A stretch of 64,000 nucleotides of DNA, taken from the NCBI GenBank assembly GCA_026770705.1, contig JANJGN010000100.1:372001-436000 (forward strand), written 5' to 3'. Each line of letters starts with the position of its first letter. Position 1 is the first letter of the stretch. The notes below the pieces were generated by a model, which had not been told where the DNA came from, did no database searches, and saw only the letters and a program-made list of their open reading frames with translations. A program made the translations under genes and the position numbers. This DNA is from Isurus oxyrinchus. Taxonomy: Eukaryota. Positions 4,264-52,520 of this stretch are shown here, in pieces.

Positions 4264-4331
4264 TTTTCCATTATTTCTGAATTTAACCATTGCTCTCTAA
4301 CAGTAAAGCGAATCGACGTTTGCACAACACC

Positions 4332-4365
4332 TGCAGTAGCAAAGATTGACCAGTGGGTGGCGGTG
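4332..4365 (+). promoter_or_regulatory. CTCF-like site (upstream motif + core)
   Basis: TGCAGTAGC-6bp-TGACCAGTGGGTGGCGGTG. Confidence 0.6.
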
Positions 4366-4389
4366 AAACCGTGATTGCTTCCATCACAT

Positions 4390-47725: not shown

Positions 47726-48239
47726 TGTTTCGGACTCAGTGCATGAAATGGTGTTCTAGACCGAATCCCTCATCACATGTCAAAATATATTTGGATGTTC
47801 ACATGAAGTACTGTAGCCCCAAGGGCCCTGGCACAAAAGCTAGGAAGTGGGATTAGACTTGATAGATCATTTCAGGCCATTATGGTTAGGGTGTGCACAA
47901 TGGCCTATTTCTGTGCTGCAGAAATCTATGATTTTCAGATCCTATGAAGTGCGTTGAGGTCTCAGAAAGTGTACAGAGGAAGGTAATGAGTTTGTTAACA
48001 AGGATCAGGGTCTTTAGTAACAACAATCAATTGGACAAATTGGCAGCATTCTGCTTGTGATAAAGAAGATTAAGCAGAAACCTAAATGCTTTTTCCAAGA
48101 TGATGAGAGGTTTGAAAGAGAATTAGCAGAGAACACCAGTTCCTTCTGTTCATTGTGTCAATATCCAGTGATCATAGCTTCAGAACAAATGTATATATTA
48201 GCAGATTTGTAAAAGGGCGATGAAGAGAAATATTTCGCC

Positions 48240-51200
48240 AGCAACTGGTTCCCTTTATATTACACCAGATCCTGCCTCAATTATTACTCTTTGAGTTCAA
48301 GTCACACTTTTAGTTTTGCTGAAACCTGTGAAATTTATGGATGCATAATCTGGTATTTGTATTTTTATTACACTAGGCTCTGACACAATTAACTCTGTGC
48401 TAATCAAGCCTCTGTTTCAGGCCGGCCCCCAAATCAGTTACTACTACATTAGAGCATTTCGCTATTTATATTATATAACACTCTGTTTCAGTTATTAGTG
48501 AACCATACACCGTGTCTCTATATGTCGCACTCGACCACGTCTCAGTTACTACTATACTAGAACATGTATGTGTTAATATTACCCTGGATCCTGTCTCTGT
48601 TGTTACTGCACTGGAACCTGTCTCCATTTATAATGTTTTACATAATTGTTTCTGTTAAAATTGCACTGGAAAATATATCTCTTTATATTTTACAGTGGGC
48701 CCTTTCTCAGTTATTACTGCCCTATACCATGTTTCTGTTAAGCTAACACTTTACCCACGCCAGTAAACATTGAATTATATCATGGCAAACGTATTGGAAA
48801 CTGGTGAGGAAATAGTGAAGTTAACGCGCAGCACAAAACAATGGAAACAGAAACAATTTTTTTTAATTGAATTTCATTGAGAGTGGAAAGTGTTACATTC
48901 CATTCCAGGTGAGAGAATTACAGATTTATTATGCTCACGTTAGATAAAGGTACAGTTGCATTTTCACCGCCTCTTGCACAGATCATCACACACTCGAGTG
49001 ACGCACAAGTGATCACTTGTCAACAAACAGAGAAAATGGTGGGTAGATGTCCTTTATTCTCCATGTGATTTAATCCACTTTCGAACTGAATTCTGAGCGC
49101 AGCTAAACTCACTTTGGAATCTAAATAGGCATTTTCCACACAAGAACTCGAAAAAGACGTCCGCAACAAGAAATGTTAATGATAATAGATGATCTGAAAT
49201 TGCTGGATGGATGGTTCGAAATATAGATAGACTGACAGCCAAACAGACAGGTACGCAGCTAGATGGGTTGACAGATAGAGAGACTGAGATACACAACATC
49301 TAGCGTAATATATACAGTTTAATGCTAAATAACCTTTTCGGTGGCTCATATGATACAAACAGGGAGATGGTCTTGTATAATGTGAAGAGATGTATGCATC
49401 AGTGCAATTACTTACTCCAACAGGGCCTACTAAAAAACATGAATTGAGACTAGGTCTTTTGCACTGCGATCTGAGACAGAGTCCTGTGTAATTTAAAGGA
49501 AGGCATAACCCAGTCATTATGTATCAGCACCTTTCATGGTCTTAAATACCTCGATCAAAGCCCCTCTTAACACCCTCTATTCTAAGGAAAACGATTCAAG
49601 ATCTCCAAGGTCTAGTAACATTCGGATCAATCTCCTCTTCATCCTCTCTGCGACCTTCAAATGCTTTATAAAACAGAGTTCCTGGAATAATTATGTACAA
49701 TATACATGGAAACACAGTAGGGAGTACTTTAACAAATGTTGTTTTTAATCATTCACTAGGCTGAAGTATTTATTTATCTCTATTCATCCAGGAGATGTGA
49801 GCGTCTCTGACACGGCCAGCATTTCCCCCATGCTCTGCTGTCCTGGAACTGAATATCTGGCTAGACATTTTCAGAGTCGGAGGATAGTTAAGAGTGAACC
49901 ACGTGCTGTGGGCCTGGAGTCACATTTAGGCCAGACTGGGGAAAGATGCATATTTACTTCACCGAATGTTCATTAGTGAACCAGATGCGTTTATAACAAT
50001 GAAAATTTAAAAGATCCAGTTCCATTTCCATTTTTTTTATTCATTCATGGGATTTGTGCGTTTCCAGCTGAACCAACATTCAATAGCCAAACACAATTGC
50101 CCTTGAGAAGGTGTTAGTGAGCAAACCTCTTGTACTGCTGCAGTCCACGTGCTGTAGGGACACCCACAGTGCTTCTAGGAAGGGAGTTGTATGATTTGGA
50201 CGCAAGGATAGTGAAGAAACAGGGACTTTCCATTGTTGTTGCTGTGCTTCTGCTGCCCTTGTTGCCCGGAGAATTGGGGAATATTCCACCACACTCCTGA
50301 CATGTGCCTTGTAGTTTGTGGACAGGTATTTGCAGAATTCCCAGCTTCCGAACGGCTCTTGTCTCAATCGCATTTAAATTCCGCCAGCTGCTGTGGTGGG
50401 ATTTGAATTCATGTCCCCAGAAGATGAGTCTGGACCTCTGGGCTAGTGATGAGCACTTGGGACGCTATAACATTCAAGGCTATGGGCCAAGTGCTGGTAA
50501 ATAGGATTAGGTAGGTAGGTAGGTCAAGTGTTTCTCAAGTGCCGGTGCAGACTCGATGGGCCGAAGGGCCTCTTCTGCACTGTGATTCTGTGAATCTGTG
50601 GCAGAGCTACAGCCAGGTCGTGCCTGAGTTAGGGTCCAGTGTATTAAACCGCTTGATACTTTCAAAATGGTGGCAATTCGCCATTTCTAAAGGGGAATTG
50701 GGAGTCGGTAGACATGTTTGACTTAACAACTATTCCAAATCAGTCGATAATAAATAAGTAAAACATTAGAGACTGTCTAATGTAATATAAACCATCCATG
50801 CCCATCCTTACATTACACTAGGCCCTTTTTCAGTTATTGCCGCCTGAGGCAGTGCTGGTTTGGTATGATTTAGGCAAACCAACTTACACTGTCATCTGGT
50901 GGCCAATCGTTGCCATTACTGCTATCGTGAAAATGTCGACGTTCGTACTGTTGTTGATAGAAACGTATCAACAAACAAATTTGCACTTATATTCCACTCA
51001 ACGCATTTTTAATGAAAGGGAATTAAATGCTGTAAAAATAACTGGTGAAGCAAATCCACCTTTGTGGAAGTAACTTGCAAACATTAGGAATAATGTGTCT
51101 TGTATGCACACACTCACAGACACAAATAGACGCAGATACATATGTTGAGGCTCAGTCACACAACCAGTAACCACGGAAAATGTGAGTGTAAAGGCCCTCA

Positions 51201-52520
51201 GGAGAAACATTCCTTAACATTAAAACACGGTGTACAATAGACACAACAGAGATTTCCACTAATCTTTATAAACTGCAATGCGTTCTGGCTCACCTATCCT
51301 TCAGTCCCTCAATCCAGTTCAAATTTTCGAGATTGTCATAAGATTCGATCAGTACTTTCAACAAAACTGTGACATAACACCGAGCAATGGGAAATTGTAC
51401 ACAGCTCCTGATGGCTGTGACCAAGACTAAACGTACTTTACAACAAACAAAAATCCATCTTCCCACCGAGTCAAATATGTTCTTTAATTATTATGAGACA
51501 TACTTCTCCCTTCATCCATCTGTCCATTTACCTATCACAGAAAAAAATGCTGTACCACAATAACTGACATTGGCAATAGATTAATATAAACAAAGTGTCC
51601 AGTGCTGTCATTACAGAAAAAAGGCCTTATTTAACATAAACAGCGATAAGGACTCCTGCACTCTGAGCAGTTTAGTCCATGAATAACTATGGCAGACCCC
51701 GTCGAATATAAACAGGGAGATGACCTCATGCAATTTAAAGGTGGGCATAAAATAGTGCAGAAATAAAGGAGAAAGAGTCTAGTGTAATATAAATAAGGAC
51801 ATGGATGAGTGCAATATAACCAGACACATGCTTCAGTGCAGCAATAACTGAAGAAGGGCCTAGTGTAAAGGATGGAGTTTATTGCACCAATGTCCGTGAC
51901 TGGACCCAGTAGAATATGGACGGAGACATGGTCAGGTTATGGCCTTGCAAACCCCTTCAGTAACTTGAACACTTTAAAACATCTCTTAACTTTCTCTGCT
52001 CTAGGATGCTATTTCTGTCGCTTTTCCACAGAACGGAAGCCCCTCACCCCATTTTGATAAATCCTACGACAGCATCTTCAGAACCCGAGAGCTCTGCGAC
52101 ATAGAAGGACAAGGACAGCAGGTGAATGGAAGCACCAACAACTGCTAATGCCGCTCCAAGTCACACACAATATTCTGATTTGGAAATATAGATTTTTTTC
52201 CTTCGTTGGTATTGAGTCAAAACCCCAGAGCTCCCTTCCCACCTGCACTGTTTTTGGATTTGAAACACACACAAGGCGGCTCACCAACACATTTTCCAGG
52301 GCAATTAGGTTTGGTTAGTAAATGTCGGCCTTGACAGAAATGTCAAAATCTGAGAACGAAGTAGAGCTAGCAATAACTGAGTGAAGGTCTGCTGTGATAT
52401 AAACATAGACATGCTATGGAGCAGTAATAATTGAGGCAGTGTATGTATGTTTTCATGGAAGCAATCGCGCCAGCACTGCCACCAGGTGGCGAAAGATTGC
52501 CATTGCTGTTACTGTAAAAT
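48240..52520 (-). repeat. Composite element copy C (reverse orientation, fragmented by LINE/SINE insertions)
   Basis: 48780-49150 is the reverse complement of the unique core (GTGGATTAAATCACATGGAGAATAAAGGACA...TGTGATGATCTGTGCAAG...AACTGTACCT). Minisatellite arms lie on both sides; head at 52450-52520. Confidence 0.7.
52474..52507 (-). promoter_or_regulatory. CTCF site about 3.9 kb upstream of the IgH promoter
   Basis: Minus strand: AGCAATGGC-6bp-TCGCCACCTGGTGGCAGTG (plus strand GCCACCAGGTGGCG, near-palindromic). Confidence 0.7.

What the first reader, a model, noticed from the sequence alone, without database searches (positions are those of the whole stretch)
4290..52520. Repeated composite element: CTCF head + 27-bp minisatellite arm + unique core + inverted arm (foldback-like, insulator-carrying)
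Seen: 4290-8420 (minus a LINE insertion) and 24590-27800 are collinear, with the same head, ~1.3 kb minisatellite arm, ~1 kb unique core with (CT)n, and minisatellite in the opposite orientation. A reversed copy lies at 48240-52520 and a truncated head plus arm at 20180-20730. A reversed core fragment (TGAAGGTGGAGATGG near 31270, then (GA)n) directly precedes the giant satellite. Known: Foldback-type transposons have inverted arms of tandem subrepeats, and mobile elements spread CTCF sites in mammals. Inference: this may be an unannotated non-autonomous foldback-like family, or an ancient duplication unit, that distributes CTCF sites around shark Ig/tRNA clusters. I found no transposase, clean terminal inverted repeat or TSD.
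Basis: partly seen in the sequence, partly recalled or inferred. Interest (0 to 1): 0.8.

Follow-up and report, generated by a model that had tools for sequence, protein, structure and literature searches.

The report
Old repeat carrying CTCF-like sites
A roughly 3-kb DNA block (a short unique head that matches the binding site of the genome-folding protein CTCF, then 27-letter tandem repeats, a unique middle and the same repeats turned round) lies in several old, decayed copies upstream of a shark antibody gene; it looks like an old duplicated block and not a jumping gene, but its CTCF-like sites appear to have been kept by selection.

Summary
The composite repeat is real. Copies A (4294-8295, split by a 1-kb repeat insertion) and B (24584-27400) are collinear at 65-78% identity. 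Each has a head, a 1.3-1.4-kb 27-bp array, a ~1.1-kb core, an inverted 27-bp array and a short tail. C (20171-20725) is a head plus array. The "reversed copy" is two partial reversed copies, E (48240-50960) and F (51003-52547). A sixth, marginal solo head lies at 17621-17687. The arms belong to the same 27-bp family as the 13-kb 54-bp satellite.

Foldback-transposon features fail. The far end carries no inverted head, there is no terminal inverted repeat or usable TSD and no transposase, and public contigs show no high copy number at 80% likeness or more. Diverged contigs (83-90%) cover both element B and its flank, which fits block duplication. Heads E and F lie 5.4 and 3.8 kb upstream of an IgW-like V gene.

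The scan noted the same module and layout beside other Ig clusters of this catshark genome on other DNA (unchecked notes).

New here: the CTCF core motif shows a constraint pattern, 4 mismatches in five heads against 14 expected (P about 0.0007). CTCF binding is untested, and the link across the N gap to the giant satellite is unproven.

The parts
4294..4410 (+). Head A. About 90 unique bases plus the first array unit. CTCF-like core at 4350-4363 (1 mismatch). Starts 30 bases after tRNA-Ser (4182-4263).
   Evidence: Head profile E 2.6e-31; motif; tRNA
4400..5670 (-). Left arm of A: 27-bp minisatellite, units in the orientation opposite to the giant satellite.
   Evidence: Lag-27 match 0.428 vs median 0.260; 29 unit matches on the minus strand, 1 on plus
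5660..6463 (+). Core of A, first part, with (CT)n at 6106-6167.
6464..7459 (.). Interspersed-repeat insertion splitting the core of A. B shows the empty site.
   Evidence: Relatives at 16818-17471 (76%), 14154-15005 (73%) and 27960-28117 (84%); junctions read
7460..7770 (+). Core of A, second part.
   Evidence: Core profile E 2.5e-90; alignment
7760..8240 (+). Right arm of A: the same 27-bp family inverted relative to the left arm, with a 54-bp dimer signal.
   Evidence: 9 unit matches on plus, 0 on minus; lag 54 = 0.419 and lag 27 = 0.392; arm-to-arm complementarity 74-83% over 35-47 nt
8240..8295 (+). Short tail shared by A and B after the last unit.
   Evidence: Alignment; local score reached by 2 of 300 shuffles
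17621..17687 (-). Marginal sixth head (G) without an array. CTCF-like core at 17645-17658.
   Evidence: Head profile E 0.037; motif with 1 mismatch
20171..20290 (+). Head C. Core motif at 20230-20243.
   Evidence: E 2.2e-30
20290..20725 (-). Arm of C, cut off by a LINE-like fragment.
   Evidence: 8 unit matches on minus; 67-68% to the A and B arms; sequence read
24584..24699 (+). Head B. Core motif at 24643-24656, a perfect match to the 14-letter consensus.
   Evidence: E 3.8e-29
24700..26140 (-). Left arm of B.
   Evidence: 32 unit matches on minus, 0 on plus; lag 27 = 0.417
26130..27140 (+). Core of B, uninterrupted. No Pfam family for its 148-aa ORF and no Rfam match.
27130..27345 (+). Right arm of B.
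   Evidence: 5 unit matches on plus; 71-81% complementary to the left arm over 36-55 nt
27345..27400 (+). Tail of B.
31237..31545 (-). Candidate reversed core trace (D) followed by (GA)n. Weak evidence. It lies left of the N gap at 31558-31687.
   Evidence: 15-mer identical to A only; core profile E 0.19; sequence read
31700..45030 (+). Arrays of the same 27-bp family. Degenerate units at 31700-32489, a non-array stretch at about 32490-34100 (with a match at 33998-34298 to the LINE-like region at 13917-14194), then the giant 54-bp (2 x 27) satellite. No head at either end.
   Evidence: 33998-34298 ~ 13917-14194
48240..48760 (-). E: right arm, reversed.
   Evidence: 10 unit matches on minus; TRF 27-bp row at 48539-48624
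48878..49133 (-). E: 3' quarter of the core, reversed.
   Evidence: Core profile positions 772-1048, E 1e-18; three-way alignment
49300..50843 (+). E: remnant of the left arm. Plus-type units at 49300-49500 and 50760-50790, two units flipped at 50793-50843, broken up by repeat insertions at about 49500-50750.
50842..50960 (-). Head E. Core motif at 50889-50902.
   Evidence: E 2.6e-29
51003..52440 (+). F: weak reversed core trace (51003-51119), then left-arm units (51540-51930 and 52360-52440) interrupted by a repeat insertion at about 51940-52340.
   Evidence: Core profile E 0.0068; 7 unit matches on plus; 52062-52251 relatives
52429..52547 (-). Head F. Core motif at 52476-52489. The site is near-palindromic and also matches on the plus strand (52479-52492).
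   Evidence: E 1.4e-29
56393..56937 (+). Context: leader and V exon of an IgW-like heavy-chain V gene, 3.8 kb (F) and 5.4 kb (E) downstream of the reversed heads.

Best explanation
This is an old, low-copy composite repeat and not an active or recognisable transposon. The unit is about 2.8-3.0 kb. It has a unique head of about 90 nt, a 27-bp minisatellite, a core of about 1.1 kb, the same minisatellite inverted, and a short tail.

The unit was copied a few times locally, in both orientations. The copies were then broken up by retroposon insertions, deletions and array turnover. One array of the same 27-bp family grew into the 13-kb 54-bp satellite. Later the whole region travelled with large block duplications of the Ig-cluster neighbourhood.

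The arms are passive tandem DNA that changes by slippage and unequal exchange. The head carries a CTCF-type site that has been held under purifying selection, so it is probably bound by CTCF and acts as an orientation-dependent barrier to loop extrusion. Under the convergent-site rule (recalled), heads C and B (plus strand) and heads E and F (minus strand) face each other across about 26-32 kb that enclose the satellite, just upstream of the V gene.

Shown: the structure, the copies, their boundaries, the motif and its substitution pattern. Inferred: the way the unit spread, CTCF binding and looping.
For: - Collinear copies at 65-78% identity, with the arrays matching in register.
- One unit family in all arms and in the giant satellite.
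- Five heads at E 1e-29 to 1e-31, plus one marginal.
- B and C share 44 nt beyond the common head start: 0 of 300 shuffles reach the score. This points to segmental copying.
- Summed contig depth over B (X3: 20-2344 per bin) is like the adjoining non-repeat flank (1046-2472). It is 10 to 4000 times below the transposon bins (24,701-922,285, and 4.27 million).
- Diverged contigs at 83-90% lie on the arm/core junction (25538-26216), on the core (26231-26483) and also on the flank (27528-27892, 28138-28399).
- Contigs from organisms about 3-6% diverged cover the arm, core and right arm, so the element predates those splits.
- The CTCF consensus at 1 mismatch or fewer gives 6 matches against 0.23 expected; 0 of 100 shuffles reach 6. 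All six are heads.
- Constraint: fixed motif positions changed in 4 of 40 cells, against 118 of 491 in the rest of the head (Fisher one-sided p 0.027; p 0.010 against G/C columns; p 0.020-0.045 with other column sets). At degenerate positions 7 of 7 changes go to the base the consensus allows (p 0.001 by cells, 0.008 by 5 events). A neutral simulation gives 14.1 mismatches against 4 observed (P 0.0007).
Against: - Flanks of the in-window copies are otherwise unrelated. A and B end at the same points. That also fits a discrete mobile unit.
- Head identities are nearly star-like (56-70%) and give no duplication order.
- Contig depth is not a copy number, and the diverged contigs cannot be linked into one paralogous block.
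- The layout at other Ig clusters comes only from unchecked AI notes.
- The constraint test rests on five sequences, a star model and a motif chosen after it was seen. By plain pairwise identity the motif window is only among the best 6 of 100 windows of the head.
- No binding, chromatin or Hi-C data were available.
- E and F point away from the V gene, so they would not anchor a loop that contains the Ig cluster.
Confidence: 0.55

Rival explanations
1. This is an extinct non-autonomous mobile element, foldback-like or of another class. The copies arose by independent insertions of a discrete unit bounded by head and tail. Block duplication only came later.
For: - Five heads begin within about 20 nt of the same column.
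- A and B share both ends while at least 300 nt of flank on each side are unrelated.
- Copies lie in both orientations and include truncated forms.
- The arms are inverted arrays of tandem subrepeats.
- Pairwise head identities are star-like.
Against: - No inverted head or terminal inverted repeat at the far end.
- No TSD could be recognised.
- No transposase among the 10 ORFs scanned.
- No relatives at 80% or more beyond a few contigs, in contrast with the flanking transposons.
- B and C share 44 nt beyond the unit's start.
- The tail is weakly supported (2 of 300 shuffles).
Confidence: 0.25
2. This is a neutral relic. The CTCF-like motif is an accidental feature of the ancestral head and survives in slowly evolving shark DNA. 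It is not bound and has no role.
For: - Motif-window identity (0.713) is matched or exceeded by 6 of 100 windows of the head.
- At 2 mismatches or fewer the window shows no enrichment beyond the heads: 11 matches against 6.9 expected, and 7 of 100 shuffles reach 11.
- The two follow-up summaries returned (s1-300798, s1-300803) read such sites as passengers of block duplications or as an untested insulator guess.
- No binding data exist.
Against: - Substitutions avoid the fixed positions and, at degenerate positions, go only to allowed bases.
- G/C columns elsewhere in the head change faster (27.9%) than the fixed motif positions (10%).
- A head that had lost the motif would still be found by the 120-position profile, and none was found.
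Confidence: 0.2
3. The apparent composite is a chance or alignment artefact of satellite-to-satellite similarity.
For: The arms are degenerate tandem repeats that cross-match each other and the giant satellite.
Against: - The non-repetitive heads and cores align at E 1e-18 to 1e-236 with profiles.
- The arms match in register only.
- The shuffled window gives 5 unit matches, against 364 and 95 on the two strands.
Confidence: 0.01

Closest known systems
Foldback (FB-type) transposons of Drosophila and other eukaryotes (recalled, no paper read here)
   Same: Two arms made of short tandem subrepeats in inverted orientation around a unique middle. The arms have unequal and variable length.
   Different: Only one end carries the unique head, and the other end has an unrelated short tail. 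There is no terminal inverted repeat, no TSD, no transposase-bearing copy and no high copy number. The arms are now only 71-83% complementary over 35-55 nt.
Repeat-borne CTCF sites in mammals, for example SINE B2 waves
   Same: A CTCF-type motif sits inside a repeated unit and is multiplied with it.
   Different: There are a handful of old copies here, not thousands. Spread looks like block duplication and not retroposition. No binding data exist.
CTCF sites of the mouse and human IgH V region (PMC6746451, passages read)
   Same: CTCF motifs lie within 8 kb upstream of VH leader exons. The mouse VH sub-consensus given there resembles the shark heads of B and C. Both share a uniform orientation within a block and stronger conservation than the surroundings.
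   Different: The mammalian sites are single sites per V segment in one translocon locus, with proven binding (EMSA, ChIP). The shark sites sit in a composite repeat with minisatellite arms. The two nearest the V gene point away from it. They are untested.
CTCF-bound tandem arrays such as macrosatellites (recalled), and the scan's own note on a CTCF-motif minisatellite in the shark AID intron (s1-868606, unchecked)
   Same: CTCF-type motifs are associated with tandem repeats.
   Different: Here the motif is in the unique head next to the array and not in every repeat unit. Unit matches inside the heads are confined to the last 27 nt.

Membership tests
Foldback-type transposon | Inverted arms built of tandem subrepeats | tested here: met
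   Units lie on opposite strands left and right of the core in A, B and E. The best arm-to-arm complementarity is 71-83%.
Foldback-type transposon | The two termini are inverted copies of each other | tested here: not met
   The head profile finds no reversed head at 8240-8700 or 27345-28000. No terminal pair appears among the inverted repeats. The tail is unrelated to the heads.
Foldback-type transposon | Target-site duplication at the ends | tested here: inconclusive
   The ends can be placed only to within about 20 nt at 60-70% identity. No duplication was visible.
Foldback-type transposon | Dispersed multi-copy family, with some copies carrying a transposase | tested here: not met
   There is no excess of contigs at 80% or more over B compared with its flank. 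0 of 10 ORFs match a transposase; 1 of 10 has a weak RVT_1 hit, and it belongs to a LINE elsewhere. A whole-genome census was not possible.
Segmental (block) duplication unit | Paralogues extend into the flanking unique sequence | tested here: inconclusive
   Contigs at 83-90% lie on B's right flank as well as on its arm and core, but they cannot be linked. In the window only B and C share 44 extra nt. Other flanks are unrelated.
CTCF-binding site | Match to the core consensus CCASYAGRKGGCRS (PMC6746451) | tested here: met
   0-1 mismatch in 5 of 5 heads and in the marginal sixth.
CTCF-binding site | Upstream motif at the usual 5-6 bp gap from the 19-bp core (PMC9004084 passages) | tested here: inconclusive
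   A 9-nt block lies exactly 9 nt before the core in 5 of 5 heads, with no indel. The letters of the published upstream motif were only recalled; they are in that paper's supplements, which were closed.
CTCF-binding site | Evolutionary constraint on motif positions | tested here: met
   Changes in 4 of 40 cells against 118 of 491. All 7 changes at degenerate positions go to allowed bases. Simulation P 0.0007. The sample is small.
CTCF-binding site | Occupancy by CTCF in cells | not testable with these tools
   All runs offered were contigs of DNA-type runs. No catshark CTCF ChIP data turned up (listing only).
27/54-bp satellite family of this window | Shared unit consensus | tested here: met
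   Arm consensus units agree with the satellite unit over most positions. The unit matrix hits the C, E and F arms and both right arms, none of which were used to build it.

The most novel reading that the evidence does not exclude
The heads are true, selected CTCF anchors. A conserved oriented set (minus, plus, plus ... minus, minus) upstream of each shark Ig minilocus would form convergent loops that sequester the satellite-rich spacer and delimit the cluster. That would be an early-vertebrate counterpart of the CTCF architecture of mammalian antigen-receptor loci, built from one duplicated repeat module.
Probability: 0.18. Interest if true: 0.75.

Novelty: new member of a known kind. Interest (0 to 1): 0.4.

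Why it matters
Sharks keep their antibody genes as many separate miniloci, and how each one is insulated and regulated is unknown. A repeat module that places well-kept, oriented CTCF-type sites a few kb upstream of a V gene gives concrete sites to test by ChIP, Hi-C or deletion. By the scan's unchecked notes the module recurs beside other clusters.

As a repeat, the finding is ordinary. It is an old, decayed, low-copy duplicated block whose minisatellite arms also seeded a 13-kb satellite.

Tried and rejected
- **Ancestral tandem macro-array (tail joined to the next head):** rejected. Tails of A and B show no similarity to the sequence upstream of any head (10 comparisons, z from -0.9 to 2.6).
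- **Symmetric foldback with a second, inverted head:** rejected.
- **Head as a decayed stack of array units:** rejected. Unit matches occur only in the last ~27 nt of the heads.
- **Head or core as a known RNA or tRNA-derived SINE:** 0 Rfam matches at E up to 1 on 24300-27600.
- **Core as coding sequence:** no Pfam family for its 148-aa ORF.
- **The pairs (C,B) and (F,E) as one inverted duplicated pair:** not supported. C-B (0.70) and A-C (0.69) are the closest heads, while C-F is 0.58 and B-E is 0.59.
- **Giant satellite as the expanded left arm of a reversed copy:** left open. It depends on a 15-mer and on the unread gap. No head lies at 44800-45400.
- **Ungapped diagonal scan of the arms:** uninformative because of indels.
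- **Findings look-up by sequence:** blank, which means nothing.
- **Literature:** searches found no paper on catshark satellites or minisatellites of this kind, or on CTCF at shark Ig clusters (listings only).

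
Full report
**The observation**

A self-comparison of the window (BLASTN, word size 9) shows a collinear chain between 4299-8133 and 24573-27355.
- Heads and the first 670 bp of the arms match at 66.8% (190 bits).
- Three core blocks match at 65-78%.
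- The start of the right arm matches at 74.7%.

Only the in-register match of the arms was reported. The arrays therefore correspond unit by unit and were inherited as arrays. A global alignment of the two cores gives 627 identities in 965 ungapped columns, or 65.0%.

Copy A is interrupted at 6464-7459 by an interspersed repeat with relatives at 16818-17471, 14154-15005 and 27960-28117. Reading both copies shows a clean insertion, with B as the empty site. A third copy, C (20160-20723), is a head plus 430 bp of arm. It is 67-68% identical to both A and B and is cut off by a LINE-like fragment.

**The arms**

TRF missed the degenerate arms; among them it listed only a 27-bp row at 48539-48624. 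Autocorrelation shows a 27-bp period.

| Region | Lag-27 match |
|---|---|
| A left arm | 0.428 |
| B left arm | 0.417 |
| C arm | 0.411 |
| A right arm | 0.392 |
| B right arm | 0.450 |
| Region medians | about 0.26 |
| Cores and three control regions | 0.22-0.28 |

(All values.)

Consensus units cut from each arm agree with the unit of the giant 54-bp satellite, which is a dimer of 27. I built a position matrix from the A and B left arms and 60 satellite units. At 8 bits it gives 364 plus-strand and 95 minus-strand matches, against 5 in the shuffled window.

The map of unit orientation is as follows.
- Minus-type units: 4400-5670 (29), 20290-20725 (8), 24700-26140 (32) and 48240-48760 (10).
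- Plus-type units: 7760-8240 (9), 27130-27345 (5), 31700-32489, 34100-44800, 49300-49500 (3) and 51540-52440 (7).

The arms on the two sides of each core are thus inverted. Their present complementarity is modest, 71-83% over 35-55 nt.

**The heads**

While reading 48000-52800 I found two reversed heads, not one. A profile of the five heads (alignment, nhmmer) recovers these sites.

| Head | Position | Strand | E-value |
|---|---|---|---|
| A | 4294-4410 | + | 2.6e-31 |
| C | 20171-20290 | + | 2.2e-30 |
| B | 24584-24699 | + | 3.8e-29 |
| E | 50842-50960 | - | 2.6e-29 |
| F | 52429-52547 | - | 1.4e-29 |
| G (marginal) | 17621-17687 | - | 0.037 |

No head lies at the right ends of A or B or at either end of the giant satellite. 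Only the last ~27 nt of a head resemble an array unit. The head is therefore about 90 nt of unique sequence. Pairwise head identities are 56-70% and nearly star-like; the closest pairs are C-B (0.70) and A-C (0.69).

**The cores, and copies D, E and F**

A profile of the A/B core finds a reversed match at 48878-49133 (profile positions 772-1048, E 1e-18). Only weak traces appear at 51003-51119 (E 0.0068) and 31237-31300 (E 0.19). A three-way alignment confirms the match in E.

- **E** has, from left to right, a right arm, the 3' quarter of the core, a broken left arm and a head.
- **F** has a faint core trace, a left arm interrupted by a repeat, and a head.

The supposed copy D in front of the giant satellite rests on one exact 15-mer shared with A but not with B, plus (GA)n in the expected order. 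It is separated from the satellite by the assembly gap at 31558-31687. I did not test continuity across the gap, because the one read-laying run had been used on B. I neither filled the gap nor looked it up, and I treat D as unproven.

**Boundaries and transposon hallmarks**

- Sequences 300 nt upstream of the five heads are unrelated in 8 of 10 pairs at z below 3; the best two reach z of about 4.
- The one solid extension is 44 nt shared by B and C directly upstream of the head; 0 of 300 shuffles reach the score.
- A and B share a short tail after the last unit and nothing beyond it.
- Tails do not resemble the sequence upstream of heads. An ancestral tandem array of whole units is therefore not supported.
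- No terminal inverted repeat was found.
- No TSD could be judged at this divergence.
- Of 10 ORFs scanned against Pfam, none matched a transposase. One, in a LINE at 13731-14027, gave a weak reverse-transcriptase hit.
- Rfam gave nothing on 24300-27600 at E up to 1.

**Public runs**

Twenty of the 24 runs listed hold part of 23000-28900, and all are kept as contigs. I laid contigs of four runs at 80% likeness.
- X3 and X2 are one sample of organism A. Its long near-identical contigs differ from the window at roughly 0.2-1.8% of letters.
- X7 is organism B, about 3-7% different.
- X8 is organism C, about 4-6% different.

The tool warns that depth is not a copy number, so I use only the gross contrast. 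For X3, summed depth per bin compares as follows.

| Stretch | Summed depth per bin (X3) |
|---|---|
| Element B and right flank to 27924 (24576-27924) | 20-2344 |
| Non-repeat flank beyond the repeat (28122-28900) | 1046-2472 |
| LINE upstream | 24,701-922,285 |
| SINE-like piece at 27925-28121 | 4.27 million |

The element is therefore not a high-copy family at 80% or more. Among the 32 pieces listed (of more than 250,000 laid), several are diverged by 10-17%.
- X2 record 3 lies on 25538-26216, across the arm/core junction, with 97 other letters and 21 gaps in 710 nt.
- X3 records 12, 13 and 14 lie on the arm, the junction and the core.
- X2 record 7 lies on the flank at 27528-27892.
- X2 record 8 and X3 record 16 lie on 28138-28399.

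This fits at least one older paralogous block that includes the flank. The pieces cannot be linked, however. Contigs of organisms B and C cover the arm, core and right arm (for example X8 record 30, 915 nt on 26654-27540), so the element predates those species splits.

**Context**

An ORF at 56611-56970 is an Ig heavy-chain V exon.
- All 5 of 5 candidates in the word search are Ig V domains. The best is a Scyliorhinus torazame protein at 84% identity. An IgW V region of Heterodontus matches at 64%.
- tblastn places the leader at about 56393-56506. It finds no second V gene in the window.
- Heads F and E lie 3.8 and 5.4 kb upstream of the leader and point away from it.

Earlier notes of this scan are AI notes, mostly unchecked. 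They describe the same module on other pieces of the same catshark genome.
- A pair of reverse-oriented sites 4-5.6 kb upstream of a V gene (s1-300803).
- Five sites in a minus, plus, plus ... minus, minus layout beside an Ig cluster (s1-868706, s1-865477).
- Ig clusters bracketed by the module (s1-869002, s1-871623, s1-863604).
- The same composite with inverted arms (s1-871201, s1-898057).
- A follow-up that read the copies as passengers of block duplications (s1-300798).

In this window the order is A(+), G(-), C(+), B(+), the satellite, E(-), F(-), and then the V gene. That order matches the layout in those notes. I could verify it only for this window.

**The CTCF-like site**

All six lie in the heads. 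The 14-letter form, CCASYAGRKGGCRS, is printed in PMC6746451 (passages read). With it, at 2 mismatches or fewer, there is no enrichment beyond the heads: 11 matches against 6.9 expected.

A 9-nt block sits exactly 9 nt before the core in all five heads, without indels. Passages of PMC9004084 state that an upstream motif bound by zinc fingers 9-11 lies 5 or 6 bp from the 19-bp core. The spacing here would fit if that core starts 3-4 nt before the 14-mer. That offset is recalled, and the motif letters are in supplements that I could not open.

By plain pairwise identity the motif window (0.713 against 0.599 for the rest of the head) is only among the best 6 of 100 windows. The pattern of change is more telling.
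- At the eight fixed positions, 4 of 40 cells differ from the consensus. In the rest of the head, 118 of 491 cells differ from the column majority (one-sided Fisher p 0.027). Against G/C-majority columns, which change at 27.9%, p is 0.010. With five other gap-free column sets, p is 0.020-0.045.
- At the six degenerate positions, 7 of 30 cells differ, which is the neutral rate. All 7 show the alternative base that the consensus allows (p 0.001 counting cells, 0.008 counting 5 distinct events).
- A neutral star simulation with the head's own rate and spectrum gives a mean of 14.1 mismatches to the consensus in five copies, against 4 observed (P 0.0007). It gives P 0.0003 for all five copies keeping 1 mismatch or fewer.

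There are caveats. The test uses five sequences and an assumed perfect ancestor and star tree, and the motif was chosen after it had been seen. A head that had lost its motif would still score well with the 120-position profile, and none was found. Survivorship is therefore an unlikely explanation.

**Reading**

The structure is best explained as an old, low-copy composite repeat. It was copied locally, decayed, and was later carried along by large duplications of the Ig-cluster neighbourhood. Its arms are passive minisatellites of a family that also produced the 13-kb satellite.

The head most likely works as a CTCF site. By the convergent-site rule (recalled), C/B (plus) and E/F (minus) would pair across the satellite-bearing interval, and A (plus) with G (minus) across 13 kb. 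E and F would stop extrusion coming from the satellite side and would not anchor a loop over the Ig cluster.

The foldback-transposon reading keeps some weight, because A and B share both ends while their flanks differ. It fails on termini, copy number and coding capacity.

**Comparison and novelty**

The nearest analogies are foldback elements (arm architecture only), repeat-borne CTCF sites in mammals, and the CTCF sites within 8 kb upstream of mouse and human VH leaders described in PMC6746451. Those mammalian sites are conserved above their surroundings and uniformly oriented (passages).

The listings from my searches show no paper on this repeat or on CTCF at shark Ig clusters. I read only the listings of those results.

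The scan itself has met the module repeatedly on other DNA of this genome.
- the full anatomy in this window;
- the split of the 'reversed copy' into two copies;
- the failed foldback tests;
- the contig evidence against a high-copy family;
- the substitution pattern that points to constraint on the motif.

**Limits**

- No whole-genome search, Dfam or Repbase comparison, chromatin data or raw reads were available.
- The gap at 31558-31687 remains untested.

Noticed in passing
window 56393-56937 (+), and 58168-58203: An IgW-like heavy-chain V gene with leader and V exon. It is 84% identical to a Scyliorhinus torazame protein and 64% to a Heterodontus IgW V region. A weak J-like match lies 1.2 kb downstream (E 0.41). 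It is the only V gene in the window.
   Followed up: partly
window 586-659 (+), 4182-4263 (+), 10480-10574 (-), 3026-3099 (-): A small tRNA gene group. It holds tRNA-Ser(TGA) 30 nt before head A, an intron-bearing tRNA-Tyr, a further Rfam tRNA at 586-659, and an ARAGORN-only call at 3026-3099 with an undetermined anticodon.
   Followed up: no
window 27925-28121 (also 6478-6636, 16824-16987, 50031-50197): A SINE/LINE-tail-like repeat with an A-rich end. It has by far the highest summed contig depth in the laid stretch (4.27 million in X3, against about 1000 for unique DNA).
   Followed up: no
window 52476-52492: The CTCF-like site of head F is nearly palindromic. It matches the consensus with 1 mismatch on both strands, so it could be read in either orientation.
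   Followed up: partly
window 37448-37676, 45541-45643, 60198-60327: A short repeat inside the giant satellite, with relatives on both strands at two other places (77-82% identity). It is the hairpin insertion noted separately by the scan (s1-871989).
   Followed up: no
window 8624-9360 and 52760-52900: A long impure (GT)n tract of about 740 bp just after copy A, and a shorter one just after head F.
   Followed up: no
window 21300-24500 and 29337-30300, 13731-14027: LINE-like stretches. The first ends directly in front of head B, and 13731-14027 gives a weak reverse-transcriptase hit. The arm of C is cut off by a related 3' fragment (20725-21300, similar to 19819-20056).
   Followed up: partly
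window 62568-63888: Four assembly gaps sit in an AT-rich (21% GC) tract of ~80-90-bp repeats. 63493-63582 is 100% identical to 63911-64000.
   Followed up: no
window 50793-50843: Two array units next to head E are flipped relative to the rest of that arm. They form a small local palindrome with 51838-51876 (87% complementary).
   Followed up: no
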